64,000 nt of DNA from Bigelowiella natans CCMP2755 (GCA_000320545.1 ADNK01002144.1:26853-90852); one strand, 5' to 3'; shown: positions 16,915 to 58,541, counted from the first letter of the stretch. The notes: generated by a model not told the origin, from the sequence alone. Numbers and translations are program-made.

Positions 16915-17029
16915 CTATGAAACGGGCGGGTGCAATGAATATTTTATTAATAAGTTTGAATTTTTCAATTGTCATCCTAATTAGCTAATGCATAGCTGTG
17001 CAAAGCCGCGCTAGCGCGGCTACAGCGCT
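16915..17029 (+). repeat. Conserved dispersed element, copy 1 (convergent spacer)
   Basis: TTTTTCAATTGTCATCCTAAT...TAGCTGTGCAAAGCCGCG...CGGCTACAGCG matches the copies at ~32290, ~46370 and ~58410 (reverse). Confidence 0.8.
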
Positions 17030-17759
17030 TATACGTTGCATGAACTGATTTGTTTGTGTCTGTGTTGTGTCTGCCAGGCTAGCACGATGTCAAGATGCCT
17101 GCTATATGCATGTCATGTGCATGGCATTATTATCATTATCAACGATTGTTGGTTGTGTATGATGCATGCATACATGCTCATTACGTACACACGTTATATT
17201 CGGCCCCTTTTAGCCTTGCGCATGCTAGCATGCCTCGCACGCACATACCTGCGATGCGATGCGCAGCGTCGAGCGGGACCCTGCGCCAAATGCACGCCAT
17301 CTGCTACGATACGTAGAGCCTATGCGCTACTTTAATGCTTGAATTTCTAGGCCAGCTAGCCACAAGCATGGGCACATGTACGAGTCTAGCAGACAATTTA
17401 CAGCCTATGCAATTCCGCGACAGCGACAAGTTACGATGTGCCTAGCAGCTAGCTAGGATACGGCTATGTTGCTTACACGAGCGATCGATGGCGCAGCATT
17501 ACAATAGCTATAAAATGTGGAGGTTGCAGCGCATCACATTATCTAGTCGTGCATGTCGCTAAATAAAGCCCCCCGCGGGCATGCACCTGTAGCCTCATGA
17601 GGGCATGCAATGCAGTGTGGCCATGCTCTGGCGGGAACAAAACACCTGGACACTTCTGCCATATAAGCACTAGCTAGCAGAGACTGTATATACACCTTAC
17701 GCTGTTTTGATGCAGCCAAGATAAAGACATGTCCCATAATTGAATCCCGTTTGATTATT

Positions 17760-20029
17760 GCATTAAAAGACAAGTGAATCCATGAACACAAGTAGATAGC
17801 CTCTGCAACGTTCGAGCATTTATTCGTAGAATATTTTGACCGAGATCAGTGTGGCGCACCGTCATTGCATCTCTTAAAACAAATTACATATGCTGGAAGA
17901 TATGTATTCTAATATGCCGAAAATAAAAAATAGAAGTGGCAGCTCGTACACCAATTCCCATGCCAGCATGGAGTAAGTGATGGCCATTTTCTCTCCTGCG
18001 TTTGCTGCATACGCTGCCTCAACGGTAACTAGCACAGTCATAGGGACGATAATGAGAGCCTGAAACAGTATTCCATTAGCATGACAGCGAAACAAAGTTA
18101 TAATTGAAGTATATTGGCCTATCGTTGCGCAACGTTGCTAGGGATGAACATCCACAACGTGTAAAAATAATATGCAAAATTCATGTGTGGTATCACACTC
18201 CTAAAATGTGTCAAGCAAAGAAGTAGTAATTCAATGAATATCGACCTGGACCCCACAATAAATCGAGATGGCGAGTTTCTTTTCCATACAAGAATAGGCC
18301 CTAATTGTTTGAGGAAGCGCAGCACGCACAAAACAAGCACAACGAATGCCCGAACCATCAAGAGCTTATTCTTATGCCGTGCATGAATGGAATATACAAT
18401 ATAATATGATATACAGTGTACGAAGTCTCATTAAAGATTACTATTTCATATTACCATGCAAATAGGGGCATTATAATAAGCTGAATCAGAAACATTGCTG
18501 GAATGATGCAAGCTGGTATCCTTTAAACAAACCAATGTAGAACACATATTCATATTCAGCGACGCAAATCTACCAATTTGTGTATGTATGACAAATTGAA
18601 TTTAATATAAACATGAACATATTTAAGTGTAACAAAATAATTTTCACCAGAGTTCAGCGTAGTAGTAGTCCTGAGGAGCCACACCAACGTAGCAACTTGA
18701 AGCGGAATTCTGATGGGAAAATCCGAAATATAAAATTTCTACAAACTACGCAAATATACATTTAGAGGGTACATTTCCCGCCTCTGAGAAGTCCTTCAAG
18801 TGTAAGTCGAAGATGGTTGAAACGATAGACAGCATTATTACTCCTAAAATTGCGGGTTGTGGTCGTCTAAATCAGTAAAAGATTCATTAACGAACGAAGA
18901 GGAGAATGAAGTGGAAAGAAGTGATGAGAGTTGCAGTGTAAGTGAGAGAAAAGAGCTATCAGACAAAGAAGATATCTACACCTAATAAGAGATTCAGTAG
19001 AGTTTGGAAAGCGAGTGTTGCCCATGCTGGTGAATCCATTTCTTTTTCTATAAAGCTCCACACAGCCAATATGATGCCAAATATCATTGCGAAACCTAAT
19101 TGCATTTTATTTTTTCGAGATGTAAAGGGAATTGAAAACATTTGTAAGCAAATTGATTTGAAACTATGATCAGTATTGCGTGGATATCATTAGCAATGAG
19201 GAAACAAAACAGACTGAATATATTCTATTACAACCCATGACGAGTCCCGTATACACTTCGTAATAATAGACCTGGCTTCGAAAGTATATTCTGAAAAGAA
19301 TGAGTCATTATTCTTTAAACGCACGATTGGTATTTTCAATTGGAAAAAGAGTGCTACTACATATGAGGTGTGTATTTGTTCCATGCACATATTATTTGCC
19401 TCCCTACATATGCATAATCGTTATTACCCTTCATATCGTCCCATGGATCCTCGAGTGTCATAATAAAATAGGTGAAAGCCTAATAGATTCACTCTGTCGT
19501 CCGCAACTCCATATTTGTAGACGCATCTGAATAATGAGGAGAAGAGATCTGACACCTGTTGAGTACAAATCATCGATGGAATACACTAATTCTGTACTTT
19601 CCGAACTCAAAGAAATGTTGAGGATTCTCTTTTGCTTGAACTTTGCATGCCTAGATACAAAGGAAAATTAGTAAGAGTAATAGCGGATCTCAGGAGACAG
19701 AGTTTTGTTGGGGGAACGTGTATTTTGCATCACCTCGCATATCTCTTTAGACGAATAGTGGTCTTGTATCGCATCTTGACGCTAAAAATATGCATCTGTT
19801 TTATTTAATCCTCCTCCTTAGTTACTTCTAAGTTTATACTCAACCTTTCCTGCTTCCATGTTCAGAAACGTGAAAAGTATTATCTATGTAGAAGAAGCAG
19901 CAAAATTTCAGCGTATGTCTTACTCAAACCCAATTAGCTACTTACGATTCTGACAACATTTGCAACTGCATATGGTAATGATAGCGTTGGCCATAGCCTG
20001 AAGGTGATTGGAACATCCTCATCCTCCAT
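17760..20029 (-). CDS. Multi-exon multi-pass membrane protein of unknown function (3' end approximate)
   Basis: Start MEDEDVPITFRLWPTLSLPYAVANVVRI|gtaagt at 20029. Hydrophobic exons include QLGFAMIFGIILAVWSF, WATLAFQTLLNLLLG, LMVRAFVVLVLCVL and ALIIVPMTVLVTV, with GT-AG introns. Confidence 0.6.
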
Positions 20030-20263: not shown

Positions 20264-20501
20264 TGGTGGTAAATTACCAACGATTTTGGTGCTCTCTCCT
20301 CTCCTCCGCCCGTGAACAGAACCAGGTAGCTTCAAGCATCAAGCTTCCGAAGAGAAGGAGGAAGAGGGGGGAGGAGGAGGAGGAGGACGATTCGGAGATC
20401 AAGCGGCGGCCCGTATACGAAGCAACCAGCATCAGGAAGGAAGGACCACAAGGAAGCTGGCGGCGGACACTCCTAGAAACAGAACCCGAACCCTACTGCT
20501 A

Positions 20502-21765
20502 ATGGCAATTGTGCTGGGGACGTGTGCATCACCACCAAAAATCGAAAAGGCAGAAATCAGATGCGCCCTGGATCGTTGGGTCTCAAAGGTTTGATCATGA
20601 AAAGCGAAAGCGGTGTGACTGCATGATGATCTCTGAAGATTCCTCATTGGTAATGTTTTTAGGTTGTCGTCGTTACAACAATAATTTTCTTACTCCGGAC
20701 ATTGATAAATCCGTATCCCTCCCATGCGAGCACTTGTTACAAGCGCCATCTAAAGTATGAAAACACCTGGAGAAGGAGGGAACCGAAAATCACAAAGATA
20801 AGGGGGGGCTGTTTCGAGGCTGCCCCCCCTCTTCTTCCTCCCTCGTCGACTGAGATGGGGGAGACTACTACAGCCCACAGCGATTGCGATGATCCAATGG
20901 TCGCAGAAATATGTTGCGAAGCTCCAGACAAAGAGGAAGGATGGAGCTCCTGTGGTACTATAGAATTTAAGCGCTAGCTGATTGACAATATGACAACTAC
21001 AAAACGGCATCATCGCTTTGTGCACCGAGAACTGACTGCTGTGGTCTTTAAGTAGTTCGAAGACGGGGTGTTATGCAACCCTTTCCCTTCATTCTTTTTG
21101 ATAGATAGTAGTTTTGAAGGAGTAAGGATAAACTTGTTTTGAAAACAACTGTGTGTCAATATACTCTGATGTAGGAGAATCGTCTATGTCGGATATGGTG
21201 AAACATCTAGAGGAAAGCACGGTTATTATTGTTTATTATTATTATTATTGTTGTTGTTATTTGTAAGACACAGTCTCTTGAACATACGCACTGTTGGCTG
21301 CTGCTACGTTTTCTTCATCCATTAACGCAAGAGCATAATGAATAATAGGCAGAAAAACTGGGCGGTGGAACACCACGTTCTCAATCATCGCCATCAATTC
21401 TTGACAATTTGATTATGGCACACCGAGAAAAGGTTTTCTGAATAAATCGTTTCCTCAAAATAACCAACCCATATTCTCATTGCACTTTAAATGTATTTTG
21501 CAACTTTGATAATAGCGAGTAGAGGGTCTGTTAAAGAATGCTTCAACCGTGAAGAAGGAAAGAGTCAGGATATACGCCGGATCTAGTGATGTAATATAAC
21601 ATGATGGATTGAATGAAAATACTCAGTAGCATGAGCGGGATCAATAACCAGCAGTATAGTTGCTAAGTAAAGTAGAGGTTTGCATCGGATTGATGATTGC
21701 AGGGAATAAGTATGTAGCTAGGGGTTGTTGCGGTAGGTGAGATCGTACTGCTAGTAGCAGTAGTA

Positions 21766-21805
<40 letters not shown>

Positions 21806-23215
21806 GAGGAGGAGGAGGAGGAGAGATACGATATTGTTCAAATAATGTATTACTTACATACTAGGGCGAAACTGGAAGCTTGATACTCACATATCTGACA
21901 GATTCTTTTTATTTTGAACATAGTTTTCAGATACAGGATCATCTACAAGAGATTTAGTCGAAGAATGCAAGGAGCATATGCTATCACCCGGTTGTAAGTA
22001 GTACCAGCGAGTAGTACTGATAGTATCCCAAATGTATTCTCAGAAGACAAATAGTCGATAGCGTGCAATAATAGAGACTCTTGGCCGACAACGGGGCCTA
22101 GTCGCCATCATTAGTGTTGCGGTGTTAAGTTACTGGAAGCTTCTTATTAATACTACGTGCTTTTGTAGACTATCAGAAGATGCTACAAAAAACAAACAAC
22201 TGTTCTTCGCAGGTAGTGTTGCTGGCCTGATCACTATACTTGTATTTCCGATGATGATGATGATGATTATTATTATTATTATTATTGTTATTATTGTTAT
22301 TATTATTGCATTCGTTCGGTTCATAATGCATTCTTGATCAGTCGATATGTTGGAAGAAGGACCTTTACAATTGAAAACATAATCAGAAATCCTTGGCCTA
22401 CCGTCACCTACTTGTTTTCTTCCTCTTCTTCTTCTTCTTCTTCTTGATATATCAGGGTGCTGTTTCTTCGTTGTCCGATTTTACAGACGAATTTAGTGGA
22501 CGCCTTATAATCTCAATGGTAGCAAATACTATACGTGACCATTAGACGCAAGGAAGAAGAAGAATGAGAAGAATAGACGAATTTGCTGCTCCTGTTGTTA
22601 TTACACGTACTTATTGCATTTTTAATCAAAGTGAAATCTCTTTGTAGATTTCACGGCATGCTATCACATTTGTCCATGATTCATGCATGATATTTAGTCT
22701 ACCACAAAATAGTAATAGTAGTAGTATCAGCAGTAGCATCAATGTGGATTAGGAGGGATAATGATAATCCACTACCACTACTACTACTACTACTACCACG
22801 AGCATAATGATGATGATGACAATGATGATAGTGGTGATGGTTGATAATACTACGAGAAGGAAAGAGATAATGGATGATGGAGACGTAGTAAATTGGTGCT
22901 CCTAAGGACATTTATGCTATGATGACAGAGGAGCGAAGAAGACCGCAGTGATTCTCTGTTTCGCTCAATAGCAAGGAATGTCTACGGCGATGACATCTAC
23001 GGTTTGCTCTTACCACTGCTCCGGATACATCATTAGCTAGTAGCATCCTCACACTCTTCATTGTGTTAGAAATTAAGCATCATCATCATCATCGTCATCA
23101 TCACCAACTACACTGAGGATGTATTTGTTCGTCCGAATCAGCAAACAATGTCCGTATTCGGATATGTGATTGGTAATTGACATGTCATCTGCAGCATCAC
23201 TCAAAACCTGCCTCT

Positions 23216-23252
<37 letters not shown>

Positions 23253-23410
23253 CACTACTACTACTACGCACATTTGTGAGTTGACTTCATCACTTCTTCG
23301 TTTTCCTCCACCAACTGTCCTCCTGTTTGCTGTCAACCACGGAGTGAGTGGTGGTTTCTAACGATGATGATTAATGATGATTATGGTTTTGAGTCTCATT
23401 TCTTCTTCTT

Positions 23411-23442
<32 letters not shown>

Positions 23443-24734
23443 GGATTGATAATGGCAAGTTGAGATTAGTGGGGGGTACAACTAACAGCATGGCCGTTGT
23501 TAACTTTAGGATGAGCACATATTTGCTGCCAGACTCTGCAATGTATAGACAGCAAACGGCGGGTTTATCCGAGTCAATATACAGGTAGTGGTAGCAGTAA
23601 GTAGGCCGCACTACTTTATCAATAGTGCTGTATGATGATGAAGGAAGAAACCTCCTGTTGTAAGGAATGGGGAGAGAGAGGAGGGAGAGGAGGGAGAGAA
23701 GAAGAAGAAGAAGAAGAAGAAGAAGAACCTCACTTAAATATCTGGTTCACCACATTCAGCACACTTAATACTGACATGTATTACATGCTCCCGGCTTCTT
23801 GTTTCCTTTCTTTGATGGACGTACATGCGCACCAACAGGGATTGGATTTGGCGCATCTACAAGCCTTTCCTTCATAACAACTGGACACTACCTGTCGAAA
23901 TTGCTGCTGCTGCTTTTTCCGGATCATCATCATCATCACCATCATCAATAAAAGCAGAAGAGAAATCATCATCTTTAGAACCATTACGCAATTATATCCG
24001 TGATCTCAGGAAGCTACCATCGATAGGAAGACATAGCGTGCTACCATCAACATCAACATCATCATCTTCAGCAGCAGCAGCAACAACGACGGCAGCGCGT
24101 CGTTCTTCTTCTTCTTCTTCTTCTTCTTCTTCTTCTTCCTCTTATCTTGATGGGGGTTATTTAGAAGCTGTGGTGTCGCAGTACTGTTTTCAAACGAACA
24201 TGTAAGTAAAGGCACTTATCATCACCAAGAAACAAATAACAACAGCTACAGCTGTTGTTTCTCAGCAAGAGTATGGAGACCAACGACGACCGATAATATC
24301 ATTTTCACACAATGATAGTAGCGATGGTGATAATGATGGTGATGACAATTTTGTGGAATGTTTAGATGCCTCTTCCTGATATCATTATGATAATAGTAAA
24401 AATAATAATTATTATAATTATGTATCATCAGGCACATCTGGAGCGGTTCTAACTGCCTACTTGAAGGTCTATATCGCCGATGCCCATGCATACACGACGC
24501 ACACATGACTGCTATAGCCTTACGAGAGGAAGGAGGAAACCAACAACAGCAGCAACAACAACCAAGAAAATGGAGGGGGGGAAGGGGCAATGTGTTGGAT
24601 GAGCGAGAAGGGGGTCCACAGATTAAGCTTGGAATGCTTTCTCTCAACTTACTGAGCATGCTTTACAATGTGTTCTTTGAGCTGAAGTTGGATACTACCT
24701 CACGCAGAAGCGTAGGATCATTATACACATTTGC

Positions 24735-24771
<37 letters not shown>

Positions 24772-25419
24772 GTCGTTTGGTGCGGTTTGAGTAGTATCTA
24801 CTGCATGTTATTGTATTCCCATCTCAGCGACGAAGAGACCATTAGTTGTTCGAGTCAAGGCAAAGAAAGAGTAGTAGTAGTAGCAGTAGGAGTAGTAGTC
24901 CCCTTCCCAACTTAATTTCACTTGGTTGCTAGCTTTAAAGCTCGTACTGAACGAATAATCCCACTTAGCCCCCCCCGCCCAACACGGTTGTGACGTTTTG
25001 GTGATGAAGTATTGCTACTCCATGACATTCACTGAATATATTGGTTGGTTGCATCTGGTGGTGGTGATTATTCTAGTGAGTACGGACTTCATCGCAGGTT
25101 GGACGGTACATGGAACCCAGGTAGTAGAACGAATGCTTAAGACTACGAGGATGTTTAATGCGAAAGGAATCAAAGAAAAGGCTGTTATAATACGGATATG
25201 AGTATATCCCCTCAGCGTATTCCAACTGACGTGTGTAGTAGTAGTAGTGGTGTGGTAGAAGTTACAAAAACCTGCACGAGTCCCATTGTGTGTTGTTGCT
25301 TTTGCCGTAGTACTTCCTCGTATTGAAAGATTTTGCTGGAGGAATGATGATAAGCTGGTAGGTATTAGAGGTGCTGCGGTAGTATTAGTAGTAGTTGTAG
25401 TAGTAGTAGTGGTCGTGTT

Positions 25420-25453
<34 letters not shown>

Positions 25454-26161
25454 GGATGATGAGGATGATGAGGATGATGATGAGGCTGCTTTCGTGGTTC
25501 TTGCTCTCCTGAGTCATGCTTACATATTTTTCATCTTTGTCCAGGATCGTTCGATGCGCATGAAGCCTACCAAACGTCGTGAATTGGGATCGAAACCAAG
25601 AAAGAGCTGTGCCGATAATTTGGTGATTGCAGTCATATTTAGCCATGTATTTCTAATAAAAATGATGATGAGGTAGTGTCGGTGAGCTCCTGCTTACTAC
25701 TGGTATTTGTTGTCAGGTTGTAGGATCTTCCGACTTGGAATCAACGGACGACATGTTCCACACGTGAGGAGTCAACAAAACGTGCATCATCGTACAAAGC
25801 GCTACTTTCATAGATTGTTATAGGCGAAGAAAGGGGGTTGCGGATAGCGTGCTGCTCATTTTGAATTCTTACAAACATCATTTCGTCCTCCGCCTCACCA
25901 TATTTGTCCATCCATCACAGGCCACCTGGTCAGACCGTTGTACAGCTCGCAGAAGGCGAAGCTTCTATTCCTTGCATGAATTGCGGATTCAATATGACAT
26001 CTGTTGAAATCGCGAGTAGCACTCAAGCTGGAGAAGGCCCCTATACAAATTGGACGCGAGACGTTCAAGAAAGGGGATATTCTATTTTGCGGTGTGAAAT
26101 GTGCGGCACCGCACACCAGGAGTACCAAGGCCAACCAGCGCATAATTTCTTTCGCAAATGA
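20502..26161 (+). CDS. Large many-exon protein of unknown function ending in a CxxC...CxxC zinc-ribbon (start approximate)
   Basis: Short open exons bounded by AG/GT between microsatellite-filled introns (e.g. AEKLGGGTPRSQSSPSILDNLIMAHREK, IKLGMLSLNLLSMLYNVFFELK). Last exon: IPCMNCGFNM...ILRCEMCGTAHQEY...FFRK*. Confidence 0.55.
21230..25490. repeat. Cluster of mostly intronic microsatellites (ATT, AGT, GAT, TTC, GAA, AT)n
   Basis: Examples: (AGT)n ~21750-21805, (TTC)n ~23400-23438, (AT)n ~24738-24770, (GAT)n ~25419-25482. Confidence 0.9.
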
Positions 26162-26728
26162 AAGCGAAGCCATTGCAACTTGCGTGTATGTTTTGTGCGT
26201 TTGGGACGTCGTGGTTATTGTAAACATGTTAATTCACGTTTAGATGAGTGCTAGCACCGCTGTAATTGGGTCCCATTATGGTGCATGATAGCTGCTATTA
26301 ATGTAATGACTTGTACCACGTGTGCAAAGCGACAGATTGCCCACCGAGCAACTATTGCAGCTTATTGCATCAAGACATCTAGACATTGCACGTTGTTCCC
26401 TTTATATCATATTGTCGAGCATGCATTGTACGTCGCCATGTGTGAGTAGAAAAGTATGAACATAAATTTTAGACGAGAGCACGGCCATACGTCGATGTCG
26501 CCAATGCGCTTGCGTGGCGCTGTAATACTGAGGCCTATAATCAGTGTTAGCTCGCCAAAGTTAATTTTTCTTCACGGATAAACGCTATCCTTAATCATCG
26601 GACAATAATCTCAATTTTCACTAATGAATCTTATTAGCATTCGCGCTTAACTCTTCTTTCGGAACATGCGATACGACTCATCTCATATTATGCATATCAA
26701 ACTGCTAAGCGCTCCTCGAATTCTAACT

Positions 26729-28419: not shown

Positions 28420-28456
<37 letters not shown>

Positions 28457-28952: not shown

Positions 28953-29315
28953 GTTCCTACTCCACCTCCTTCTCCTCTTCCTCCTCCTCCTCTGCTAACA
29001 TACGTAACCATGGATTATGACGATCAGCGCGGGACAGTAGAGCAATTAGGTAATATTACCGTATAAAATCGTCCTGGCACTGTTTATTATTAAAAGGGAG
29101 CCGTTTTATCCCTACGTCTAAGAACATATCGTTATTTTTTATAAGATATCACCGAAGATCTACGCATCGTTACAGCTGGTGGCGGGTGTGTGGTAGTTAC
29201 TGGTTACCAAGTAGTAACGACAAGCCAACAACACAACAAAGAGGAGGAGGACGAGAAGGAGGCGGAGAGCAGAGGACGAAGAAGAAGAAGAAGCCAGAAA
29301 GAAGCTGTTGCCGCT

Positions 29316-32058
29316 ATGGAAACTATCCTCGCACGCGCTGCTAAGTAATTGCTGTTAAAAGGTAAATGAAAACCCTGTTCGCAACCGTCTGTCGGTAAAC
29401 TAGATACGCTCACTTTGTGTGAATCTACAATCTTCTATTTAGTTTTTGTTCAAAGGTATCTTCGAAGAAAGCGAGTCAAAGAATGACTTTCCGGTAAGAA
29501 TAGATCTTCAAAGTTTTAGCAATACAAGGATGGATTATAATCTCAATACTATTAAGGTACTTCGTCGCTGTTGTTACGGCGGGGAAAGAAAACCATGTAA
29601 AGATCAGCGGAAAAGTTACGAAAGGGAAGCTGGAAAATGGTATGGACGTCCGGTTTGACCCCTCGGGTGCCCAAGGAGAAGTATTGAAACTGGAGCTCAA
29701 AGGAAAAGAGGTGGAAACTTTGTTTTCAGGTAAAAATATAATGATATCTGAATCGTGGAGTGTGGGAATAAATAGGTTCAGTCTGTCCAGGGAGGCAAGT
29801 TGGCAGATGTGTATCTTTTGATACGAAATCGTCATTCCCCTGAAGATGGGGACACAATGCTTGGTATTGAAGACTCGGGAGAAGTAAATACTGCCTCATT
29901 CGAGCGACTTGATGCTCAGAAGCCTCAATTTGGCAGAATGAAAACATTAAAACGGAAGGATTATGGGCAAAATGCACTTCATTTTTTCAAAGGCGATGGT
30001 GATCCTCCTAAATTTCCTCCAGAGGTTGAGGATATGTTTCGTTCTTGCGAAGATAATAATGATATTGAGATGCTTAACATCGTTACTGATCTGAAATATG
30101 ACATTAATCAACCGCATCCCTTGGAATTAGAAACTTTGTGTCATGTTGCAGCACGCAATAATCACCTTGAGCTTCTCAAAATTCTCATCGATTTCAAAGC
30201 GGACGTAAATGTAGGGGACTCTGGAGGAGATACTGTGCTTATGCATTTTATAAAATGCTGTGATACAATCTACACCTCGAGCGAAGGTGAAATTCTGGAT
30301 GCGTTGATAGAAGCCAAAGCTGATGTAAACTCACCCTCCAAGAAAGATTTTAGTCGCACCCCGCTTATAACCTGTATTCTCAAAGACCAATTCGAGCTTG
30401 CTGAGTACTTGATTAAGAAAAATGCAGATGTTTCTATAGAATCGAAACTATCTGAAAATGCACTGACTCTCGGAATTGAAAATGCTCCTTTGGAGATAAT
30501 TAAGCAAGTGCTAAATAACTGGCCGTCACCCACTCACTACCTTAAGATATGCGAAGACGTCTTAGAAATAGCTGATACCCTTAACAGACCGGATGTGGTC
30601 AAACAACTGAAGGGATCCAAGATGATGGCAATGAGCAAAAAGATTGAAGAAAAGCAAATAAACGATGAAACTAAAAACATTCTCGGCGAACTGCAAGCTC
30701 ATATGACCATCATTCAATACCAAAAAGCCAGGAAAAGGGATGGGCCACTCGTAAGCAGAGAACTTGAAAAAAAAATGGAGAAAGCCAAGGATTTCCTCGC
30801 TCATAATAAAAAACATCGTGTGGAGATACAAGATAGCGACGCAATCAATCAAGTAGAACTTGATGTTCAACAACTCAGACGTGCATTTATCAAAGCTGAC
30901 AAAGATGGAGATGGTATGATGACAAGAGAGGAAACAATCAATATGCTAAAGCTATGTGGAATGAAAGAGAAGGAGGCGAAGAGAAATGTTGAAGATTTCT
31001 TCCGAATTGCAGATGCTGACAATTCCGGAACCATTTCTTGGGAAGAGTTCGTGGAAGAATATGTTCGGATGCAGCTTGCCAAAGCAATCAATGACGTTCA
31101 TGGATACTTCCATTCTGTAGATAAAAATGGCGATGGAGAGATAGATAGAGGTGAATTCATGGAATGTTTGGTTCACATGTTCGGAAGCGTAGAAGCAGAG
31201 AGGCAGTTCGAACACCTATTCAATTCCATAGATCAGAATGGAGACGGTAAGATAGAGCTTCATGAACTGAAAGATTGGTACAAAATTCGTGCAAGGGAAA
31301 TAGTCAGATCACGCATGGTTAAGAAAATGATGAAGAAAGCTGGGAAAGCTAAAGTATGTAAAATAGAACTGAAAGCTACCTACCTACAGCTTCATAAAGC
31401 TTGTGAATACGGAAATCTTCAGATGATTAAACGATGCATTCTTAAATTGAAAAAAGCTGGACCGAAATCATTGAAAAAATATCTAAATAAAAAGGATGAA
31501 AATAAGAATCCTTTGATTTTTCTCACATTGTGGAAAGAGCACCATGGATGTATGGAGGCGTTGCTGGATGCAAAGGCAGACATCAATGCGAAAAACGGCA
31601 GAGGAAATACCATTTTACATAGCGCTTGTTCGAAGAAGGACTACCGCGTAATCGAGATGTTGATAATGAACGGTGCTAAAGAGAACATCAGAAATAAGAA
31701 AAATCAATTGTGTCACGAGGTACTCCATCCCTCTGGAGAAGTGAGGCTCCAGAAATCTTTCATTGCGAAGATTGTTAAAAAGCGAAACAATGGCGAAAAG
31801 CTGCAAGAAAAATTAGACCTTATGCCCGACAACATGCAGAAACAATATAAATTAATTTTTGATTACATTGACGAGGATAAAAGTGGTACCATATCCCAAA
31901 AGGAATTACTAGCTTATTCAGACGGTACTTCAGTTCTCAAAGATTTTTTTGTTGGTTCCAATGATGAAATTACATGGGAGACATTTCGTGATAGCATTTG
32001 GGCCCATATCGAAAGAAAGGCTCATCACAGAAAGATGAAATTGGAACGTAAACAGTGA
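29316..32058 (+). CDS. Ankyrin-repeat / EF-hand calcium-binding protein
   Basis: Ankyrin motifs ETLCHVAARNNHLELLKILIDFKADVN, RTPLITC and GNTILHSAC; EF-hands DKDGDGMMTREE, DADNSGTISWEE, DKNGDGEIDRGE, DQNGDGKIELHE and DEDKSGTISQKE. Small 5' exons start at METILARAA (29316). Confidence 0.88.
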
Positions 32059-32276
32059 GACCACAAACGTTTTACAATTGCATTCTTCGGTTTTGCATTA
32101 TAAAATATTTGGGCACGTGGAAATGTCAGTTATCATCATGGGTCGGGATTCAAAGCCACATGCGATGTACATGAACATGGTCAATAAGTACGTAGGAGAG
32201 CAAGCTATCGCAGCAAGAGCGAAAACAATGCAAGGGCGTAGCGAGCCGTGCACGCAGGTCAACGCACATGCGCAGA

Positions 32277-32349
32277 TATGAGATGAATGTAATAAATATT
32301 GATTAAATCTTTTCAATGGTCATCCTGATGTAGCTGTGCAAAGCAGCAG
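32277..32349 (+). repeat. Conserved dispersed element, copy 2 (convergent spacer)
   Basis: AATAAATATTGATTAAATCTTTTCAATGGTCATCCTGATGTAGCTGTGCAAAGCAGC. Confidence 0.85.
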
Positions 32350-32786
32350 ATATATCGACCACACCAGCAGCACATGCGACGACACCGTCTGTAGTCACAT
32401 GTTGACATTGCGTGTGTCGCTCTAGTCAGCACATCGTATCGCACACACTACGTATTAATTTGCAGTAGACGACGCCGCTGGACACGAGAGTGCGAGTGGA
32501 AATTGAAAGGTTTCATAATTTACTGATTCAATCGACATTCCATCTACGAAGCCATTCATGTGTGCATGATGATGACGTAGAAATGAACAATGGTTGACGC
32601 TAGGAACACTGTAAAACCGTACATCTGAACCACTAGCAGCTAGGCAATGATTTGGCCTGTTCGGACTACAATTGAACAACGACCAGTGATGCTTATCCTC
32701 ATTATTTATGATGGGAGAACACAATCCGAACCGAATTGAAATATGACTGCGTGAGAATGTGTCAAACGCATGGTGGCACGTGTTGA

Positions 32787-33529
32787 TCATTCCGTCTTGT
32801 CCTTGCTCTGTGCTGGCAACATCATGAGGATCACTGCAGATAATAGTTCGAAACCTGAAAATGTACACATTGACTTATTGCAATTTTCTACTGAGTGACT
32901 GATAACGTTACCTCCTGCTAATGCAATGGGTAATTTAACAACCCCGACGTGAAAATTTGCCATGAGAATCAAACCGACGCAAACTTTAGCAGCTGAGAAC
33001 ATCCATCTCGGCCTTTGGACGAGAAGAAGTCCAAGTGCGAGCACAAACTGGTAGGGAGGAAAAGTCGGAGAAATCGGTTAGGGTCGCGCTCGGATAAAAA
33101 TGAAATATGTTTGCATGGGGAATTAGTGAGAGATTGTCATGATAAAGATGGTTGAAATTGAAAAGAACAATCACAGATACCTGGAGAGACCAAAACATAG
33201 TAGCCCACATTCGTGCTATCTCGCAGTTTTTTTGGCATTCCTATGGCATACCAGAGGGTCAGGATAGATAGCAAGGCTCATATTCACCATACCTCGCTTC
33301 GTTTCGCGACAAAATGATGTGCCATCGGAGATGGCTTGTTAATTAAAACCTTCACGAAGTTTAAAGGTGCTGAATTACACACCATCGATCAAACTCTTTT
33401 TATACGATCACATGAAATATTGAGCTGTGCGATAGATATTCTCATGAGAAAATGAAGTTTGTGAGGAATGGTGCTTGGATTACCCAATATTAGCCATGGA
33501 AAAGCGAGGACGACTTCAATGAAACCCAT
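32787..33529 (-). CDS. Small (~128 aa) four-TM membrane protein, 5 exons, with C-terminal KxKxx motif
   Basis: Clean splice through four GT-AG introns gives MGFIEVVLAFPWLILAPLNFVKVL...EIARMWATMFWSLQFVLALGLLLV...FELLSAVILMMLPAQSKDKTE*. Confidence 0.75.
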
Positions 33530-40537: not shown

Positions 40538-40573
<36 letters not shown>

Positions 40574-41129: not shown

Positions 41130-41170
<41 letters not shown>

Positions 41171-41749: not shown

Positions 41750-41783
<34 letters not shown>

Positions 41784-41938
41784 CCAATAGCAAAAGGAGG
41801 AATGTAGTTGTAGGCAGGCTATGAGCGGTGCAACGTCGTCTACTCTTACGATGTCATGGTGATGAAAGCATACCTTAGTACTACTATCCCCTCGTTCCCG
41901 ATGTTGTTAACTGAAAGGTCCATTTCCACGACCGTCTA

Positions 41939-41970
<32 letters not shown>

Positions 41971-43911: not shown

Positions 43912-43945
<34 letters not shown>

Positions 43946-46096: not shown

Positions 46097-46363
46097 TGTG
46101 GCAAGTGATTTTCGTGAAGGTGCGCTCATACTTAAATTTAGCCAGCATCGCGTGCAATGTATGTGGCAAGGCAGAAACGCACCTGTTATTCAGCTAATAA
46201 GTAATTGATGCAAAGCATGCTATGCGACGTACAGAGCAATCGTGCAATAGCGAATGAGTTTGAATATTATAATATATCTATTCCTCCCAACTAGCCAACA
46301 GTGGAAATGATTATTTCTAGATTTAGTTATGAATAATGACACGACATGCGCACATGTGTTAAG

Positions 46364-46444
46364 TATGTGAGACGGATATAATGAAATGTTTAAATTTTTT
46401 CAATGGTCATCCTAATGTAGCTGTGCAGTGCAGCGGCTACAGCG
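46364..46444 (+). repeat. Conserved dispersed element, copy 3 (convergent spacer)
   Basis: TATGTGAGACGGATATAATGAAATGTTTAAATTTTTTCAATGGTCATCCTAATGTAGCTGTGCAGTGCAGCGGCTACAGCG. Confidence 0.85.
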
Positions 46445-46903
46445 TGTTAAGTATGTGGAAATAGATCATGACTAGAATGCTAAATCGGGCAGCTGGGCAG
46501 CTCCAGCTAGCCCACAGCCAAACGCCATAGATATATGACATGCCGCGCAGTCTTCGCTGACGTCGGACGCATAGACGGAAAAGTTTAGGTATATACAGCA
46601 GTGTAGCACAATAAGTAGAATGATGCATGATGACATGTACAGCACATGCGCTGATGCTCATATCTAGATATCTAGAGCTACACCCGCATGACTGCATGCA
46701 AATAATACAATGCCGACTAGCATGTATGAAGAAAATTTAGCTTCTTTAACTAAACTAACGACGTTACTTGCACAACAACACATGCATACACCGATAACGA
46801 GATCTAGTCTCCATCTAGCCATACTGTCATGAAAGAAGATTTCATCTTGCTTTGTTAACATCATCGAATGAACCACGATGTTGAATGTGGCACAACACTT
46901 GAA

Positions 46904-49055
46904 CTAAAGGACATCCTTCAAGAATTTTTCCTACAGTATGTGATAATTAATATAGTGGCCAGCACATGATAAAAAACGGAAGAAAATTTATACCATGCGA
47001 ATGTCGTGCATTTCCTCCAAAGCCTTCCATGCGGGCTGCAAATCGCATCATATTTTAAAAGAAATACGATCCATATTACTGAAATGCAAAACATATATAT
47101 TCTGAAATGACTACTAGAGCTTCTTACCTCCGCATGAAACTTAAGATATTCATTAGTAGGGTCTAGGGAATATGAATACCTGAATAACATATGTATATTA
47201 TAATGAACACACTACCGTTCAGCCGCATACGATTCTGTTTTTGATTGTGAATGTTTTCACCATCCCAGTGTCGCAGATGTAGCGACTCGACATCGTGCTA
47301 GAACAAGTACCACAGATAGCTCATCTGCTCCAAACATAGTAATGATAGTAAGGAAGAAAATGATGATATATAAAGAGGAAGGAAAGAAACAAACACCATA
47401 ATCCATAGAAACTCTGCATACATACATGATGGACACGAACGAATGCATTGTTGACACACACACACACACACACACACGTACACATACACGTATATACACC
47501 TGACGTAAGCTTGTATTTTGCAATATAGCCTTTAAGAAATGCAACCATTCCTTGATACAATAAGCTGCCGTCCTCCTTCTCCTTCTTTCCAAAGCCATGT
47601 ACTTTTCTGGGAGTGGTGGTACACCATCGATGTATTTAGTTAGTAAATTCTCACTTTTCGCGTCGATCCACCATCACAGTTGCAGGATTCATATTGTAAT
47701 ACATTAGATTGGATTGTTTGTCGTCGTGATAATTATAGATACTTTTGGTCCGCCTTCACCAACGCAATTGCAACATAGGCCATAGCAATAGCTGGATCAT
47801 TGACTCTCCAAGATATCTGGTATTATCATTACTTTAAATATCTATAACTATCATTTTGTGTATTATTACTGTCACTATTATTTTCCTCATAGGGAATAGC
47901 AGCGGCAGCAGCAGCAGCAGCACTACCACCATCAGCACCATGATTTGAAAGATGAAACGACTCTTTCAAGGGACAAGGTTTCTATGTCGGCACACACAAA
48001 CAAACCGTTGAGTCTCCAAAATCGATTACCCCCCCCACCTACGTGGACAAGAAACCGATAACGATGATGCACATTAAAACAAGTTAATAGTCTTCATGAG
48101 AAGCTTGGTATGTAGCGTCACATCTCCCTCTGATTATCTACTTCACTGTGTTGAAGAAGTCAAACAAACGTACCTCGTCATTCTTCGGAGATAATACAAT
48201 ATTCGCGTCATTGAAATCTCCATGAACAATTCCTTTCCTGATAGACAAGATTGATTAATGGATGCTTTCGCAACACATCATAGTCATTATCATTCTTATC
48301 ATCTGTAATTAGCACTGTTATCACATGGAAAGCTTTAATGATTAATAACGCAACAAGTTATTTAAAACGCATAATAATCTTCATTAAACCGAGTATACAC
48401 CATCGATGCAGTTGATCTCTCAATTCCAACTAATATTTACTGGATGATGATGATAATGATGATGATGATGATGATGATGTTTACCTTAACTTCATCTTTT
48501 CACTTAGCGGCAGCACAAGGGTCTTGAATTCCGATAACGTTTTCTGGAAGGAATCATGAACCACATGATGACTATGATGATATGCGCCATATCTTCACAG
48601 TTGTTGATTGATTGATGAGGAAAATAGATTATTTACGATCGAGATACATCGTTACTTACCATCATTACCAGCGTTCCACAACAAGGAGAACAGTTTCATC
48701 TACTCCTACTACTGCTATGACGAAGACGAGGAGGAGGAGGAGGAGGAGGAGGAGCTACTACCTTAAGTAGAGTGTGCTTAGGAAGATCGTTATGAAGCGG
48801 TTTGGTAAATACATCCGATGATACCTGGAAAATATAACATTTCCTATCAGATTCTTGCAATCAGAGACTACAACTACTACTCCTACTAATACAAATACTA
48901 ATGCTGTGGCAAGTGGTCATCATATACCATCTCGAAATTTTGTAAGTCCCATAAATGGGTTCTTTGCAGTCCTTTTGCATCGTCATCCTGGAGAGAGGAG
49001 TACAACGGGGTTACATATGGGGGGCGGGGGGGGGGGGGGGGAGGGAGAGAGATAA

Positions 49056-52263: not shown

Positions 52264-55200
52264 AACAATACGTGTTATTACTTCCAAACCGTACAGAAGA
52301 ATCAAGAAAAGATCCTACATGCTCTAGCAATGTACGTGTCTATTGCTCATGTGTATGCATGTGCTGTCCTATGCGTGCAGCAGCATCTTAAGCCAATCGA
52401 CGACATGTTGTGTAAGCATGCTAGAAGTGCTCTAATTTGGAGAAGACAAGATCGTTTTCTGTTATGAGTTATACTCTTTTTTCACGGCGAGAAGGTGCTC
52501 TGACAACACTAAGCATGGAACAGATTGACGTCAGTGGTGGAGGACCATCATCAACTTGCCACAGAAAGGAAGAGGGACGCGAACATCTCAGCATGCAAGT
52601 ATTCTTGACTGATCACTACGTTGTAATCTTGAAGATGATACGATTGTTGGAGACTTGCAGTAATGTCTTCGTGTAATTATTGCGCTACAAGTACATCATC
52701 ATCATCATGATTATTTCAGGTAGCTGTACTTAAAGCGATGAGAAAAGGGCAACGTACCATCTTGAAAAACAGAGAAAATGAACTGATGATGAGGGGAAAC
52801 AAGATCTCTGAATTGGAGGATCAAGTGGCTGCTTTGGAAGCGAAAATTGAACGGTTTATTTCAAGTGATTTATTATAGATTGTCGAATCATGATGGTATG
52901 ATATTCTATTCTTTCCCTAACAAATAGATCTTTGGTGAGCACTAGAATACATATGAAAGAAGCTGATGAACAACGAAGGTAGGTCACGATGATCCGGTGT
53001 CAGTTTTTTACTGCTGCTCTATCTCCCTCTTTCCCTCTCCCCTTCACATTCGTGGTGTTGGTCAGTTGCTGTATTTTAGATAATAATCCTACTTTTACTA
53101 GAATGATAACGAGCCTGAAGAAGAAAAATGCGGAGCTCCAACGCAGATCTGTTATGGAAGCTGCTGGTGGTGGTGGTGCTGCTGCCTCTGCTACTGCTGA
53201 TCCCGCAAATAATGCAGCAAAGGCACAAAAGGATAAGGAAGATGCTATACTGAAAGCTGATCAAGAGAAAAAAGAAGCTTTGGCGAAGGCGGAGAGAGAT
53301 AAAACAGAAGCATTGCAGAAAGCTGATCAAGAGAAGAAAGAAGCTTTGACGAAGGCGGAGAGAGATAAAACAGAAGCATTGCAGAATGCAGCAACAAAAG
53401 CACAAAAGGATAGGGAAGATGCTCTGCTAAAAGCCGATCAAGAGAAGAAAGAAGCTTTGGCGAAGGCGGGGAGAGATAAAACAGAAGCATTGCAGAATGC
53501 AGCAACAAAAGCACAAAAAGATAAGAAAGATGCTCTGCTGAAAGCTGATCAAGAGAAAGAAGAAGCGTTGGCGAAGGCGGAGAAAGATAAAACAGAAGCA
53601 TTGCAGAAAGCAGCAGCAAAAGCGAATAAGGATAAGGAAGATGCTCTGCTGAAAGCTGATCAAGAGAAGAAAGAAGCTTTGGCGAAGGCGGAGAGAGATA
53701 AAACAGAAGCTTTGCAGAATGCAGCAACAAAAGCACAAAAAGATAAGAAAGATGCTCTGCTGAAAGCTGATCAAGAGAAAAAAGAAGCGTTGGCGAAGGC
53801 GGAGAGAGATAAAACAGAAGCATTGCAGAATGCAGCAGCAAAAGCGAATAAGGATAAGGAAGATGCTCTGCTGAAAGCTGATCAAGAGAAGAAAGAAGCG
53901 TTGGCAAAGGCGGAGAGAGATAAAACAGAAGCATTGCAGAATACAGCAGCAAAAGCGAATAAGGATAAGGAAGATGCTCTGCTGAAAGCTGATCAAGAGA
54001 AAAAAGAAGCGTTGGCGAAGGCGGAGAAAGATAAAACAGAAGCATTGCAGAATGCAGCAGCAAAAGCACAAAAGGATAGGGAAGATGCTTTGCGTAAAGC
54101 TGATCAAGAGAAAAAAGAAGCGTTGGCGAAGGCGGAGAGAGATAAAACAGAAGCATTGCAGAATGCAGCAGCAAACGCACAAAAAGATAAGAAAGATGCT
54201 CTGCTGAAAGCTGATCAAGAGAAAGAAGAAGCGTTGGCGAAGGCGGAGAGAGATAAAACAGAAGCATTGCAGAATGCAGCAGCAAAAGCACAAAAGGATA
54301 GGGAAGATGCTCTGCTGAAAGCTGATCAAGAGAACAAAGAAGCTTTGGCGAAGGCGGAGAGAGATAAAACAGAAGCATTGCAGAAAGCTGATCAAGAGAA
54401 GAAAGAAGCTTTGGCGAAGGCGGAGAGAGATAAAGCAGAAGCATTGCAGAATGCAGCAACAAAAGCACAAAAAGATAAGAAAGATGTTCTGCTGAAAGCT
54501 GATCAAGAGAACAAAGAAGCGTTGGCGAAGGCGGAGAAAGATAAAACAGAAGCATTGCAGAATGCAGCAGCAAAAGCGAATAAGGATAAGGAAGATGCTC
54601 TGCTGAAAGCTGATCAAGAGAAGAAAGAAGCGTTGGCAAAGGCGGAGAGAGATAAAACAGAAGCATTGCAGAATACAGCAGCAAAAGCACAAGAAGAAGC
54701 GTTGGCGAAGGCGGAGAAAGATAAAACAGAAGTATTGCAGAACGCAACAGCAAAAGCACAAAAGGATAAGGAAGACGCTCTGCTAAAAGCTGATCAAGAG
54801 AAGAAAGAAGCCTTGAAGAAGGCGGAGAGAGATAAAACAGAAGCATTGCAGAAAGCAGCAGCAAACGCACAAAAAGATAAGGAAGATGCTCTGCTGAAAG
54901 CTGATCAAGAGAAGAAAGAAGCTTTGGCGAAGGCGGAGAAAGATAAAACAGAAGCATTGCAGAAAGCTGATCAAGAGAAGAAAGAAGCTTTGGCGAAGGC
55001 GGAGAGAGATAAAACAGAAGCTTTGCAGAATGCAGCAACAAAAGCACAAAAAGATAAGAAAGATGCTCTGCTGAAAGCTGATCAAGAGAAAAAAGAAGCG
55101 TTGGCGAAGGCGGAGAGAGATAAAACAGAAGCATTGCAGAATGCAGCAGCAAAAGCGAATAAGGATAAGGAAGATGCTCTGCTGAAAGCTGATCAAGAGA

Positions 55201-57662
55201 ACAAAGAAGCGTTAGCGAGGGCGGAGAGAGATAAAACAGAAGCATTGCAGAATACAGCAGCAAAAGCGAATAAGGATAAGGAAGATGCTCTGCTGAAAGC
55301 TGATCAAGAGAAGAAAGAAGCGTTGGCGAAGGCGGAGCGAGATAAGACTGAAGCGCTACAAAAAGCAGAAGAAGGTTTGAATAAAAAGGAAGAAGCATTA
55401 CACCAAATGCTCAAGGAAAAAGAAGAAGCTATTTCATCATTACAAAAACATGTAGATCATAGTAGGAAGGTTGCTGCTGATGAAAAGCGAAGCTTAATTG
55501 AGAAGCATGAAGAGGAAATAAGTCGTCGAGAGCTGCAGCTACAATCTCTTAAAGTTACTCATGAAGAAGAAATGGAAAAATTGAAACACAGCACTGAACA
55601 GCAGAAAATGGAAAGTATAAGAGTGGAAGTGCTACGAAGAGAAGAGGAAATGAAAAATGAACTTTTGAATAAAATGAAGAAGTATAGAGAAGCTCAAGCT
55701 GCCTCGATTGCCAGTTTGAGGAGCAGCCATCAATTGCAGTTGAATAAGATCGAACAAGAATCAAAAAGAAAGCATGAAGAAGCTCTTCGTATTGCTAAAA
55801 AGGATAATAACATTGCCTTGAAACAGGCGATACAACAAGCTACTGTTTCTGAGCGTGCCCATCAAGCTGCCAGGATGAAAGTTCAAATGGAAAAAAAGGC
55901 CGCACTGTTTGATGCTAAAACTGGAGAGGCTGTTGATGCTGCTATTAAGCAAAACAAGGAGCAGCATTTCAGGGAAATTAGTGCTCTCAAATGTGAGCAT
56001 GAGCGAACAGAAGCTGAATTGCAGAAGACAAACTCCAGTCTTAGCAAAGAGTTAGCTCAGTGCAGAGCGCAATTGGAGAAAGCATCAAAGGCCAAGGCCA
56101 AGGCGAGTGAGGTGATGAAAAGTACGCGGAGTATGTGCGACACAATAGAAAACCTAAAAAAAGGTTTGGATTCGGAAAGGGAAAAGCTAAAAGTCAAGCA
56201 AATTGAGATCCGACGAAAGCATAGAGCAACTGTATCTGGACTGGAAGAGCAGCTACATGAAATGAACAATCGATTTTCTAACGAACGAAAAGCAAGAGAA
56301 AGACTCGAAAACCACGTCAACAGACTTGAAAGTATGCTGAGCATGTATAACGATAATGGAAATCGTAAGAGTGCAGCAGCAGCTACTGTACCAGCATCAT
56401 CATCACTATTATCGCTGTTTTCTTCTGCTTCTTTTACTAGTACTAATGTTCCGCCCCCCTCTTCTTCATCTTCCCAACCCCAACAAGTACTGCAGCAGAA
56501 GCAGCAGACAAAGTTGGACGCATCCCAACACAGTTCCAGTGGTAGAAGTAGCAACAACCATCTTCACTTTAAAAACACATTATGGGAGCTTGGAGAGAAG
56601 AACAGAAGTTTGCTGATTCAAAATACAAGTTTGAAGCAAAAGATTCATAAGTACTCACGCCTCATTGCAAGTCAATCCCAAAGGGAAATTGAGCGAACGG
56701 AAAGAGAGCAAAATGAAAGCAAGGGCCAACAAGATAGAGTTAGTATGCACACAAGCATGAGAGCCCCTCCACCACCTACCAAAAAGACGGGGAGGGCAAT
56801 GGATGACAGACTGGAGATGCATAAAATGTCGGCAAAATGGCGTCATGAGGAAAATCTGAAGTTACAACAGCAAATACAGGACATGGATCATCACCACGCT
56901 CTAAACGTTAGAAGTCTTAAAGACAGACACAGATCTATGTTAGAGGCAACGCGTTCAGACTACCAGATGCGAATTGAAGCTCTTGAGTCGACGGTAAAGA
57001 CACTGAGAAACGATAGCCAAAAGAAATTTGAGCGTTTGCGCGGCGAAAAGGATGCACAAGTAGCTGAGGTTAAGAAGGCTCTCTACTTGGTGGAAAAGGA
57101 TAGAGACGAGCTGTTTACTTCTTTACGTTCATTACAAGAGATGAAACGAGACATAGAAGACGACGATGAGCAATCACTGGTTAATGAGAAACCATTGAGT
57201 GATGATAGAGGGTGCAAGGTGCGAAACGAAGAAAATGAAGACGGAAAGCGTCAGAAGCAGATTGTCGACGACGCTGGCCATAATGATGATAGCGACAAAT
57301 TTGTTAGTACCGAAGCCTTTCCTCGGGTCGCGGTTACTACCTCGCAAATGTACAAACTTAAATCAAAAATCAAAACTGCGTTCAACAACTACTTACAAAA
57401 TTCTAGTTCAGCTTCATGTTATCCAGATGTCATTAAAGCAATAAAGGCAGGCCTGGAAGAGACTGGATTCCCTTCCTCAGATGCTAACTGGTTGGAAACT
57501 GCAGTTGAAAAAAAAATAGCTAACTTAGAGCAACAAAGGAATGATTCGAGATTGACGCTACGGGATCAGAAAGCGTACACCTTAAGCCAGATCAAAGGAA
57601 GCATTCAGGTATTGTTGCATGAAAGAACTTCCTTCATCGCAGAAGATAGAACTCATGATTAG
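50651..57662 (+). CDS. PH-domain protein with very long coiled coil containing a 37-aa tandem repeat
   Basis: 5' exons KSGVVYLKPP, PRRFVVVTDHLIEVYRDQ and KWSFFTETHLESLEWVTAV (PH-like). The large last exon (ORF 52989-57662) is E/K/A/Q-rich coiled coil. Confidence 0.75.
53208..55370 (+). repeat. Coding minisatellite, 111-bp / 37-aa unit with shorter 22-aa variants, about 20 copies
   Basis: KAQKDKEDALL-KADQEKKEALA-KAERDKTEALQ-NAAA repeated with high DNA identity. Confidence 0.95.
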
Positions 57663-58408
57663 GTGACACCATGCATGTAAAAGCATTCACGTTGTGTTGA
57701 ATCGGATCTTTTCAATTGTCAGATGCGATGTCTAGATGTCATCAACGCACAACTATGATCATGTCGTGCAGCATCCAGCAAGTGCCGTACGCACATCGCT
57801 AGCTAGCTAGGCATGCTAGCATGTTGCGTGCACTGAATGCTGATGTCATCTGCATCGTCACATTGTCTGTCACAGCAGTGCCCGTCGGTCTACACGTTTG
57901 CATGTTGTGACGTGTCGTGCGGCGGATTGAAATTCGCAGGAGTTGTCGCTAGCTTTGAATGCGTAAATTGCTCACTAAATTGATTCTGTAAATTTGGAAG
58001 ATGATGAATTGAAAAATAAGAGTCACACGCAGAGACGTGCTAGCGTGTGTCTCTTTTTCTAGTGTTTGACGTGCGCGCAACGGCACAAGCTTGCCGCTTT
58101 CCATGTGATCAGCTGCTGCGTCTGCTTGCATGGCTTGTCATTGTAAGCACATCTAGATCGACATGCGATCGCCATCGCCGGCGGCGCTCGCGAGCAAGAT
58201 GAGGGCAAACACACATATGCACACGACTGCTACTAGATACAGTGCATGGGACGGATGCAATGAGCAGCAATGATCAATTCTAGTATTGCATTCGTCTAGC
58301 TAGCTAGTCCGATCTAGCTAGCTATGACAATGATCATCTCGCTACTGTGTCGCAACAATGAGCTAGCTAGCTAGCTAGCTGGAAACTATAACCAACAGAT
58401 TCAACATT

Positions 58409-58541
58409 AGCGCTGTAGCCGCGAGTATAGCGCTGCATTGCACACAGCTCTAGAGCCACATGACTAGCATCAATGAGGATGACCGCATTATTGACGACGA
58501 ACAAATTTAATTTGATTTATTATACTGTTCCGTCTTACATA
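58409..58541 (-). repeat. Conserved dispersed element, copy 4, inverted and with insertions (convergent spacer)
   Basis: Reverse complement reads TATGTAAGACGGA..TATAATAAATCAAATTAAATTT...GGTCATCCTCAT...AGCTGTGTGCAATGCAGCG...CGGCTACAGCG. Confidence 0.75.

What the first reader, a model, noticed from the sequence alone, without database searches (positions are those of the whole stretch)
16915..58541. Conserved ~80-110 bp element found only in convergent spacers (4 copies)
Seen: approximate consensus TATGTGAGACGGATATAATAAAT..TTAAATTTTTTCAATGGTCATCCTAATGTAGCTGTGCAAAGCAGCGGCTACAGCG at 16915-17029, 32277-32349, 46364-46444 and inverted at 58409-58541. A short partial (TCTTTTCAATTGTCA) lies at about 57707. 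All copies sit between the 3' ends of gene pairs and I saw none in introns or promoters. The element has an AATAAA/AATGAA-like A/T block followed by a GC-richer block. Inference: a terminator or insulator, a recruitment site for the modification system, or a small non-autonomous mobile element that targets or survives only in these zones.
Basis: partly seen in the sequence, partly recalled or inferred. Interest (0 to 1): 0.85.

Follow-up and report, generated by a model that had tools for sequence, protein, structure and literature searches.

The report
Truncated LINE tails between convergent genes
The repeated 80-110 base element is the leftover tail end of a LINE retrotransposon in the alga Bigelowiella natans, not a terminator; it is an ordinary kind of element, but its copies sit almost only between tail-to-tail genes and mostly escape this alga's TA-erasing mutator.

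Summary
The four copies are real and all lie between convergent genes; the 57707 partial is inconclusive. Read on the opposite strand, the element is the 3' terminus of an APE-endonuclease/reverse-transcriptase LINE: the last ~20-30 codons of ORF2 plus a 22-nt 3' UTR. It has at least 492 genome matches, one fixed end, variable 5' truncation and 8-15 bp target-site duplications (12 bp at 46368). A Tara Oceans contig holds an intact parent.

It looks conserved for three reasons. Only the 3' end is shared by truncated copies. The end is under extra constraint, with two predicted hairpins. Short stubs mostly escape the TpA-to-TpG/CpA hypermutation (86% of TpA kept, against 5% in copies over 2.5 kb).

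The convergent bias holds in other loci (21 convergent, 0 divergent, 3 same-strand). Whether this is targeting or survival is unresolved.

The mutator is already published (2026 preprint), and this scan noted it and the CTAG scars on other pieces of the genome. Verdict: a new family of a known kind. The convergent-spacer bias is the interesting residue.

The parts
16918..17075 (-). Old, degenerate LINE 3' stub (copy 1) with small insertions, one of them an N4-CTAG-N4 scar at 17007; 5' limit approximate; no TSD found
   Evidence: score 98 vs shuffle max 53
32279..32345 (-). LINE 3' stub (copy 2), ~67 bp, older subfamily
32272..32278 (.). 7-bp target-site duplication, left copy (right copy 32346-32352)
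   Evidence: read directly
46368..46444 (-). LINE 3' stub (copy 3), 77 bp, family 1, 95% identical to the intact Tara element, 4/4 TpA kept
46356..46367 (.). 12-bp target-site duplication, left copy (right copy 46444-46455, 1-bp microhomology at the 5' junction)
58383..58537 (+). Old LINE 3' stub (copy 4), family-2-like, with several small insertions; probable 15-bp TSD with one mismatch (58368-58382 / 58542-58556) in TAGC-repeat context
57693..57770 (-).
16571..17874 (.). Convergent spacer: DEAD/helicase gene (+) and multi-exon membrane-protein gene (-)
32058..32787 (.). Convergent spacer: ankyrin/EF-hand gene (+) and multi-exon gene (-)
46098..46904 (.). Convergent spacer: multi-exon gene (+) and kinase/phosphotransferase-like multi-exon gene (-; family judged by eye)
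57662..58840 (.). Convergent spacer: coiled-coil repeat gene (+) and coiled-coil gene (-); right limit uncertain

Best explanation
Each copy is an abortive insertion of an APE-type non-LTR retrotransposon of Bigelowiella natans. SHOWN: the reverse complement of the element is the end of ORF2 plus a 22-nt UTR, ending ...CCGTCTCA with no poly(A). Copies share that end, stop at variable 5' points and carry 8-15 bp TSDs. The next two bases are nearly always pyrimidine-purine (TA, CA, TG). Intact parents exist: a Tara contig for family 1, and young 99.7%-identical genomic copies of a sister family 2. INFERRED from known LINE biology: ORF2p binds two 3' stem-loops of its own RNA, nicks pyrimidine-purine-rich DNA and primes reverse transcription there (TPRT), and synthesis usually ends after about 80-150 nt. 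SHOWN: the terminal 100 nt carry extra sequence constraint, and short stubs keep their TpA while long copies lose it on both strands. The mutator acts on a domain: element ends are spared when the flank is spared. SHOWN: copies sit in convergent spacers genome-wide. INFERRED: this reflects a mix of insertion preference and purging of insertions in promoters and introns; the data cannot separate the two. The stubs have no host function.
For: Fixed 3' end, variable 5' end and TSDs: TSD of 8 bp or more in 23/52 copies vs 3/52 controls, p=7e-6. Extension leads into a 1173-codon frame with PF14529 and PF00078. Intact parent L064: ORF1 483 aa, ORF2 1158 aa, 88% aa identity to the genomic copy. Copy counts fall steeply with distance from the 3' end: 492, 110, 37, with differing mismatch settings. 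Family 1 vs 2 identity is 88% in the last 100 nt vs 51-79% elsewhere; identical codons 15/17 vs 331/727, p=7e-4. Both hairpins fold in four lineages, and a 43%-identity relative changes two pairs of stem 2 on both sides. TpA kept by copy length: 194/226 below 350 bp, 63/163 at 0.8-1.5 kb, 39/782 above 2.5 kb; CA and TG outcomes about equal. Degenerate-pattern counts agree, so this is not only selection by the query. Terminal TpA retention tracks flank TpA, rho 0.79. Orientation: 21 convergent, 0 divergent, 3 same-strand; 62 vs 3 flanks pointing toward the copy; random window points gave 13 convergent and 31 divergent.
Against: Fewer than half of the copies show an exact TSD; slippage, nested insertions and TpA mutation may erase them. 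The folding energy of the 3' end is not better than shuffles (z -0.5 to +0.8), and covariation rests on one distant lineage that MAFFT misaligns. The orientation test uses a home-made HMM (12/14 correct on held-out gene ends), ~1.5-kb flanks and 56 loci chosen as best matches, 32 of them not fully callable. The random control comes from one window. No RNA or DNA reads were obtained.
Confidence: 0.93

Rival explanations
1. Active targeting (sub-question, within the LINE reading): the LINE is steered to transcription-termination zones between convergent genes by chromatin, Pol II termination factors or DNA structure, as is the agent that leaves CTAG scars.
For: 21:0 convergent to divergent. Introns (8 per gene, mean 182 bp; median intergenic distance 960 bp, PMC13746701) hold more DNA, and those in the window carry TA/CA repeats, yet at most 3 of 24 callable loci could be intronic. 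80-bp stubs should be nearly neutral in introns (inference). Young family-2 flanks carry 1.25 scars/kb vs 0.035 outside convergent spacers, and an intact wild copy also abuts CTAG-rich DNA. 28 of 30 scars in the window lie in the 7 convergent spacers.
Against: Divergent spacers here are mostly only ~100-350 bp and hold promoters; convergent spacers are 0.7-1.3 kb and are nearly all the free DNA. Strong selection in a large algal population (own knowledge) could give the same picture. No de novo insertions were seen.
Confidence: 0.4
2. Domesticated regulatory element (SIDER-like): stubs retained as terminators, insulators or 3'-UTR decay elements.
For: Position between 3' ends of genes; conserved hairpins; precedent of SIDERs in Leishmania (own knowledge).
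Against: TSD-flanked independent insertions of mixed ages, either orientation, variable length. Old copies decay freely with insertions (copies 1 and 4). The constraint is seen between active lineages, not among stubs. Roughly 500-1300 matches against up to ~10,000 convergent spacers (21,708 genes).
Confidence: 0.05
3. A SINE or MITE with its own fixed structure.
For: Short length and high copy number.
Against: No common 5' head, no terminal inverted repeats; TSDs abut variable truncation points inside ORF2 sequence. No Rfam match in the window.
Confidence: 0.02
4. A recruitment signal for the TpA mutator.
For: Every long mutated family-1 copy examined that reaches the terminus carries this end.
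Against: Isolated stubs keep 84-92% of TpA, and flanks of short copies have TpA o/e of 0.8-1.3. The end is the least mutated part of long copies. In young copy L063 the mutated tracts are internal. The preprint's targets are single-copy viral insertions.
Confidence: 0.02

Closest known systems
APE-type non-LTR retrotransposons (LINEs), I/Jockey-group-like; 5'-truncated copies
   Same: ORF1 plus ORF2 with APE endonuclease, RT and a C-terminal CCHC knuckle; 5' truncation; variable 8-15 bp TSDs.
   Different: Only 22-31% identical to the nearest other lineages; no RNase H in the Bigelowiella families (the 43% relative has a weak RNase-H-like segment, E=0.002); ORF1 has no Pfam match; 22-nt UTR; no poly(A); most copies very short. 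Clade not formally assigned.
Stringent LINEs with a 3' stem-loop (eel UnaL2, zebrafish ZfL2; PMC4176376, PMC1636434)
   Same: Conserved 3' terminal stem-loop in the last ~80 nt.
   Different: Here two predicted hairpins overlap the last ORF2 codons; binding is untested.
Safe-harbour retroelements of compact genomes (Dictyostelium TRE5-A at tRNA genes; PMC5391098)
   Same: Insertions confined to gene-free positions in a gene-dense genome.
   Different: The harbour here is the convergent spacer; targeting is not demonstrated.
TpA hypermutation of B. natans (Mettrop et al., bioRxiv 10.64898/2026.01.13.699255)
   Same: TpA to TpG/CpA on both strands; RT and endonuclease domains enriched among TpA-depleted CDS.
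   Different: In the parts read (abstract to conclusion) the preprint has no per-copy LINE analysis. Here: size dependence, spared edges tied to flank state, and internal tracts in a young copy.

Membership tests
Non-LTR retrotransposon (APE-type LINE) | ORF2 with APE endonuclease and reverse transcriptase, continuous with the element | tested here: met
   PF14529 and PF00078 in L032:737-4255 and P0001; the element is the last codons plus UTR
Non-LTR retrotransposon (APE-type LINE) | Fixed 3' end with variable 5' truncation | tested here: met
   lengths 76 bp to ~5 kb from one terminus
Non-LTR retrotransposon (APE-type LINE) | Variable-length target-site duplications | tested here: met
   8-15 bp, 23/52 vs 3/52 controls
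Non-LTR retrotransposon (APE-type LINE) | Poly(A) or simple-repeat 3' tail | tested here: inconclusive
   no poly(A); in most copies with a TSD it starts directly after the terminus; several copies abut (TA)n, which may be target or tail
Non-LTR retrotransposon (APE-type LINE) | Mobility by target-primed reverse transcription | not testable with these tools
   inferred; young 99.7%-identical family-2 copies imply recent activity
I-group LINE clades | RNase H domain after RT | tested here: not met
   no PF00075 in P0001; no similarity to the RNase H region of P0015; weak trace only in relative P0002
I-group LINE clades | RT phylogeny with reference clades | not tested
   no annotated reference set at hand; the only named hit is an 'X-element'-labelled protein at 28%
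Stringent LINE (3' stem-loop recognition) | Conserved 3' stem-loop with covariation | tested here: inconclusive
   extra sequence constraint p=7e-4; two double changes in one distant lineage; folding z-scores not significant
Stringent LINE (3' stem-loop recognition) | ORF2p binds the stem-loop and needs it for retrotransposition | not testable with these tools
   needs an assay
SINE / MITE | Fixed 5' head or terminal inverted repeats | tested here: not met
Transcription terminator / insulator | Fixed position and orientation relative to transcript 3' ends | not testable with these tools

The most novel reading that the evidence does not exclude
This LINE family actively inserts into the termination zones between convergent genes, a safe harbour I found no report of for LINEs in a limited search. 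It shares that harbour with a second agent that leaves 8-bp CTAG scars. The host's TpA mutator only engages foreign blocks above roughly 0.5-1 kb and fades over 100-300 bp at the border with normal DNA, so the stubs map its size threshold.
Probability: 0.35. Interest if true: 0.62.

Novelty: new member of a known kind. Interest (0 to 1): 0.33.

Why it matters
The element itself is ordinary transposon debris and should be annotated as such, not as a terminator. Two by-products are useful. First, hundreds of copies from 76 bp to 5 kb, with an intact wild ancestor, give a natural ruler for the newly reported TpA mutator: it is size-dependent, works on both strands, acts on domains and spares edges. 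That constrains its unknown targeting mechanism. Second, the near-exclusive placement between convergent genes is a testable case of targeting versus selection in a compact protist genome, and public mutation-accumulation lines may be able to decide it.

Tried and rejected
Searches with no result: Rfam, no match; PDB sequence search of ORF2, none; ungapped repeat finder swamped by microsatellites.

Gene models: first Markov models over- or under-fitted. I used a strand-restricted HMM with two-fold hold-out instead.

First idea rejected: 'short copies escape because they are short repeats (RIP-like homology threshold)' had to be revised. Ends of long copies also escape, and retention follows the flank. 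RNA-level editing before insertion was rejected because CA and TG outcomes are equal and not clustered by strand. The TpA-free block at 35188-35875 does not match this LINE at DNA level (the tblastx step returned nothing).

Literature: searches for LINEs in Bigelowiella and for insertion between convergent genes found nothing directly relevant; the library is limited.

Full report
OBSERVATION. The four copies are at the stated places. Against the termini of two LINE families they score 84-143, where shuffles reach at most 53; nothing else in the window exceeds 45, and the 57707 partial (40.5) cannot be told from background. Each copy lies between a + gene on the left and a - gene on the right. 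The right-hand limit for copy 4 is the least certain. Genes in the window mostly alternate in strand, with divergent gaps of mostly ~100-350 bp and convergent gaps of 0.7-1.3 kb. Four of seven convergent spacers hold a copy.

ORGANISM AND COPY NUMBER. The genome has 91.4 Mb in 3736 contigs. Proteins of the element fall in 90%-identity clusters with JGI Bigna1 models, so the host is Bigelowiella natans. A 32-mer of the element has 492 matches at up to 2 mismatches, with 0 for the reversed control; the BLAST first look gave 1346 candidates.

WHAT IT IS. In 30 other loci the match starts at one sharp point and ends at different lengths. Exact duplications of 8-15 bp flank 23 of 52 copies, against 3 of 52 controls. 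The window copy at 46368-46444 has a 12-bp duplication and the copy at 32279 a 7-bp one. Following the longest copies leads into a 1173-codon frame on the opposite strand with an APE endonuclease and a reverse transcriptase. A Tara Oceans contig (L064) carries the intact element: ORF1 483 aa, ORF2 1158 aa, a 22-nt UTR, then (TA)n. A sister family (67% nucleotide identity) has at least 12 long copies, most about 99.7% identical and several with intact ORFs, and 59 matches to its terminus. Counts fall from 492 near the end to 110 at 80-110 nt and 37 at ~270 nt (mismatch settings differ). The two bases after the terminus are TA, CA or TG in 60 of 62 copies, and there is no poly(A). ORF2 ends in a CCHC knuckle and lacks RNase H. 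Apart from one 43% relative from sequencing runs, homologues are 22-31% identical, so I do not assign a clade.

WHY IT LOOKS CONSERVED. First, truncation leaves only this part in common. Second, it is constrained in the active lineages: families 1 and 2 are 88% identical in the last 100 nt against 51-79% elsewhere, and 15 of 17 shared residues use the same codon against 331 of 727 (p=7e-4). Four lineages fold into the same two hairpins, and the 43% relative changes two pairs of the second stem on both sides. This fits the stem-loop recognition shown for stringent LINEs (PMC4176376), but folding z-scores are not significant and there is only one distant contrast. Third, stubs escape the host mutator.

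THE TpA MUTATOR. Long family-1 copies have TpA o/e of 0.00-0.05 against 0.6 in host genes and young copies. In young copy L063, 58 of 62 substitutions are A-to-G after T, counting both strands. This process is published for viral insertions in this alga, with RT and endonuclease domains noted among TpA-poor genes (bioRxiv 10.64898/2026.01.13.699255), and this scan has recorded it on LINEs several times. Against L064, TpA retention is 115/137 at 40-130 bp, 79/89 at 130-350 bp, 14/16 at 350-800 bp, 63/163 at 0.8-1.5 kb, 27/168 at 1.5-2.5 kb and 39/782 above 2.5 kb. Within long copies it is 68/145 in the 100 bp next to a junction and 1/467 more than 1 kb inside (the 68/145 is corrected below). 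CA and TG outcomes are equal and not clustered. My short loci were best matches to a TpA-bearing query, so I checked with patterns degenerate at the TpA. About 79 of 100 listed copies keep site 81, with losses concentrated in known long copies. At site 271, 15 of 16 long copies are mutated while about 15 of 21 others keep TA. Terminal retention in long copies follows the TpA level of the adjoining flank (rho 0.79, p=3e-4), and L063 is hit in an internal tract of about 1.5 kb. The mutator thus works on a domain, and the stub does not recruit it. Correction: the junction figure is 26/63 plus 38/82, that is 64/145 (44%).

CONVERGENT BIAS. A strand-restricted gene HMM trained on the window gave the expected sign on 12 of 14 held-out gene ends. 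On LINE-masked flanks of 56 loci it called 21 convergent, 0 divergent and 3 same-strand; single flanks pointed toward the copy 62 times and away 3 times. Random window points gave 13 convergent and 31 divergent (p about 1e-6 or lower). An independent marker agrees: N4-CTAG-N4 scars occur at 4.3/kb in the window's convergent spacers and 0.035/kb elsewhere, at 2.65/kb beside family-1 copies and 1.25/kb beside young family-2 copies. The bias is real. Divergent gaps are tiny, so their emptiness is expected; the scarcity in introns is the part that hints at targeting. Purging by selection is not excluded.

RIVALS. Terminator or insulator: copies are independent insertions of mixed age and orientation, old ones decay freely, and most convergent spacers probably lack one; reads could not be obtained. 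SINE or MITE: no head and no inverted termini. Mutator signal: contradicted by intact TpA in and around stubs.

VERDICT. A real feature, explained as 5'-truncated 3' ends of a LINE family for which I found no description in the papers I could search (Repbase and Dfam not available): a new member of a known kind. Interest 0.33. The residue worth following is the convergent-spacer placement and the size and edge rules of the TpA mutator.

Noticed in passing
window convergent spacers 7528-8241, 16571-17874, 34821-35860, 38070-38790, 46098-46904, 57662-58840; LINE copies L035-L053: 8-bp insertions of the form 4-bp duplication around CTAG: 18.7% of CTAG sites vs a 0.6% median for other tetramers; 28 of 30 in the window lie in convergent spacers. 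Insertions outnumber deletions 58 to 8 inside LINE copies. Looks like excision footprints of an unidentified transposon; also noted earlier by this scan.
   Followed up: partly
window 35188-35875: TpA-free block in a convergent spacer; no DNA match to this LINE or to any locus held.
   Followed up: partly
window 1-64000: Genes alternate strand almost throughout, with very short divergent gaps and long convergent gaps. Structure of 20266-29500 and 38800-44300 not resolved.
   Followed up: partly
L064:4570-4972 and L054:4000-4485: Even intact elements are TpA-poor in the last ~400-500 nt (9 and 4 sites vs 20-37 per 500 nt upstream), suggesting the active lineages inherited a partly erased 3' region.
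   Followed up: no
L063 (G000:C1193) and L061 (G000:C2903): Young family-2 copies caught part-way through TpA hypermutation, in patches; ORF2 of L063 is still open, with tyrosines down from 41 to 24.
   Followed up: yes
L009, L011, L014, L016, L020, L025, L058: Stubs often sit next to or inside other stubs of the same superfamily, so insertions cluster.
   Followed up: no
L069, L070 (OZSS01 assembly), L068 (MDTE01 contig): The same 3' stubs and CTAG-rich flanks occur in other public assemblies; source organisms not identified.
   Followed up: partly
window 52989-57662: 1557-codon coiled-coil ORF with ~20 tandem 111-bp (37-aa) repeats.
   Followed up: no
window 11424-16571: Single 1715-codon open frame encoding a DEAD/helicase protein, unusual in an intron-rich genome.
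   Followed up: no
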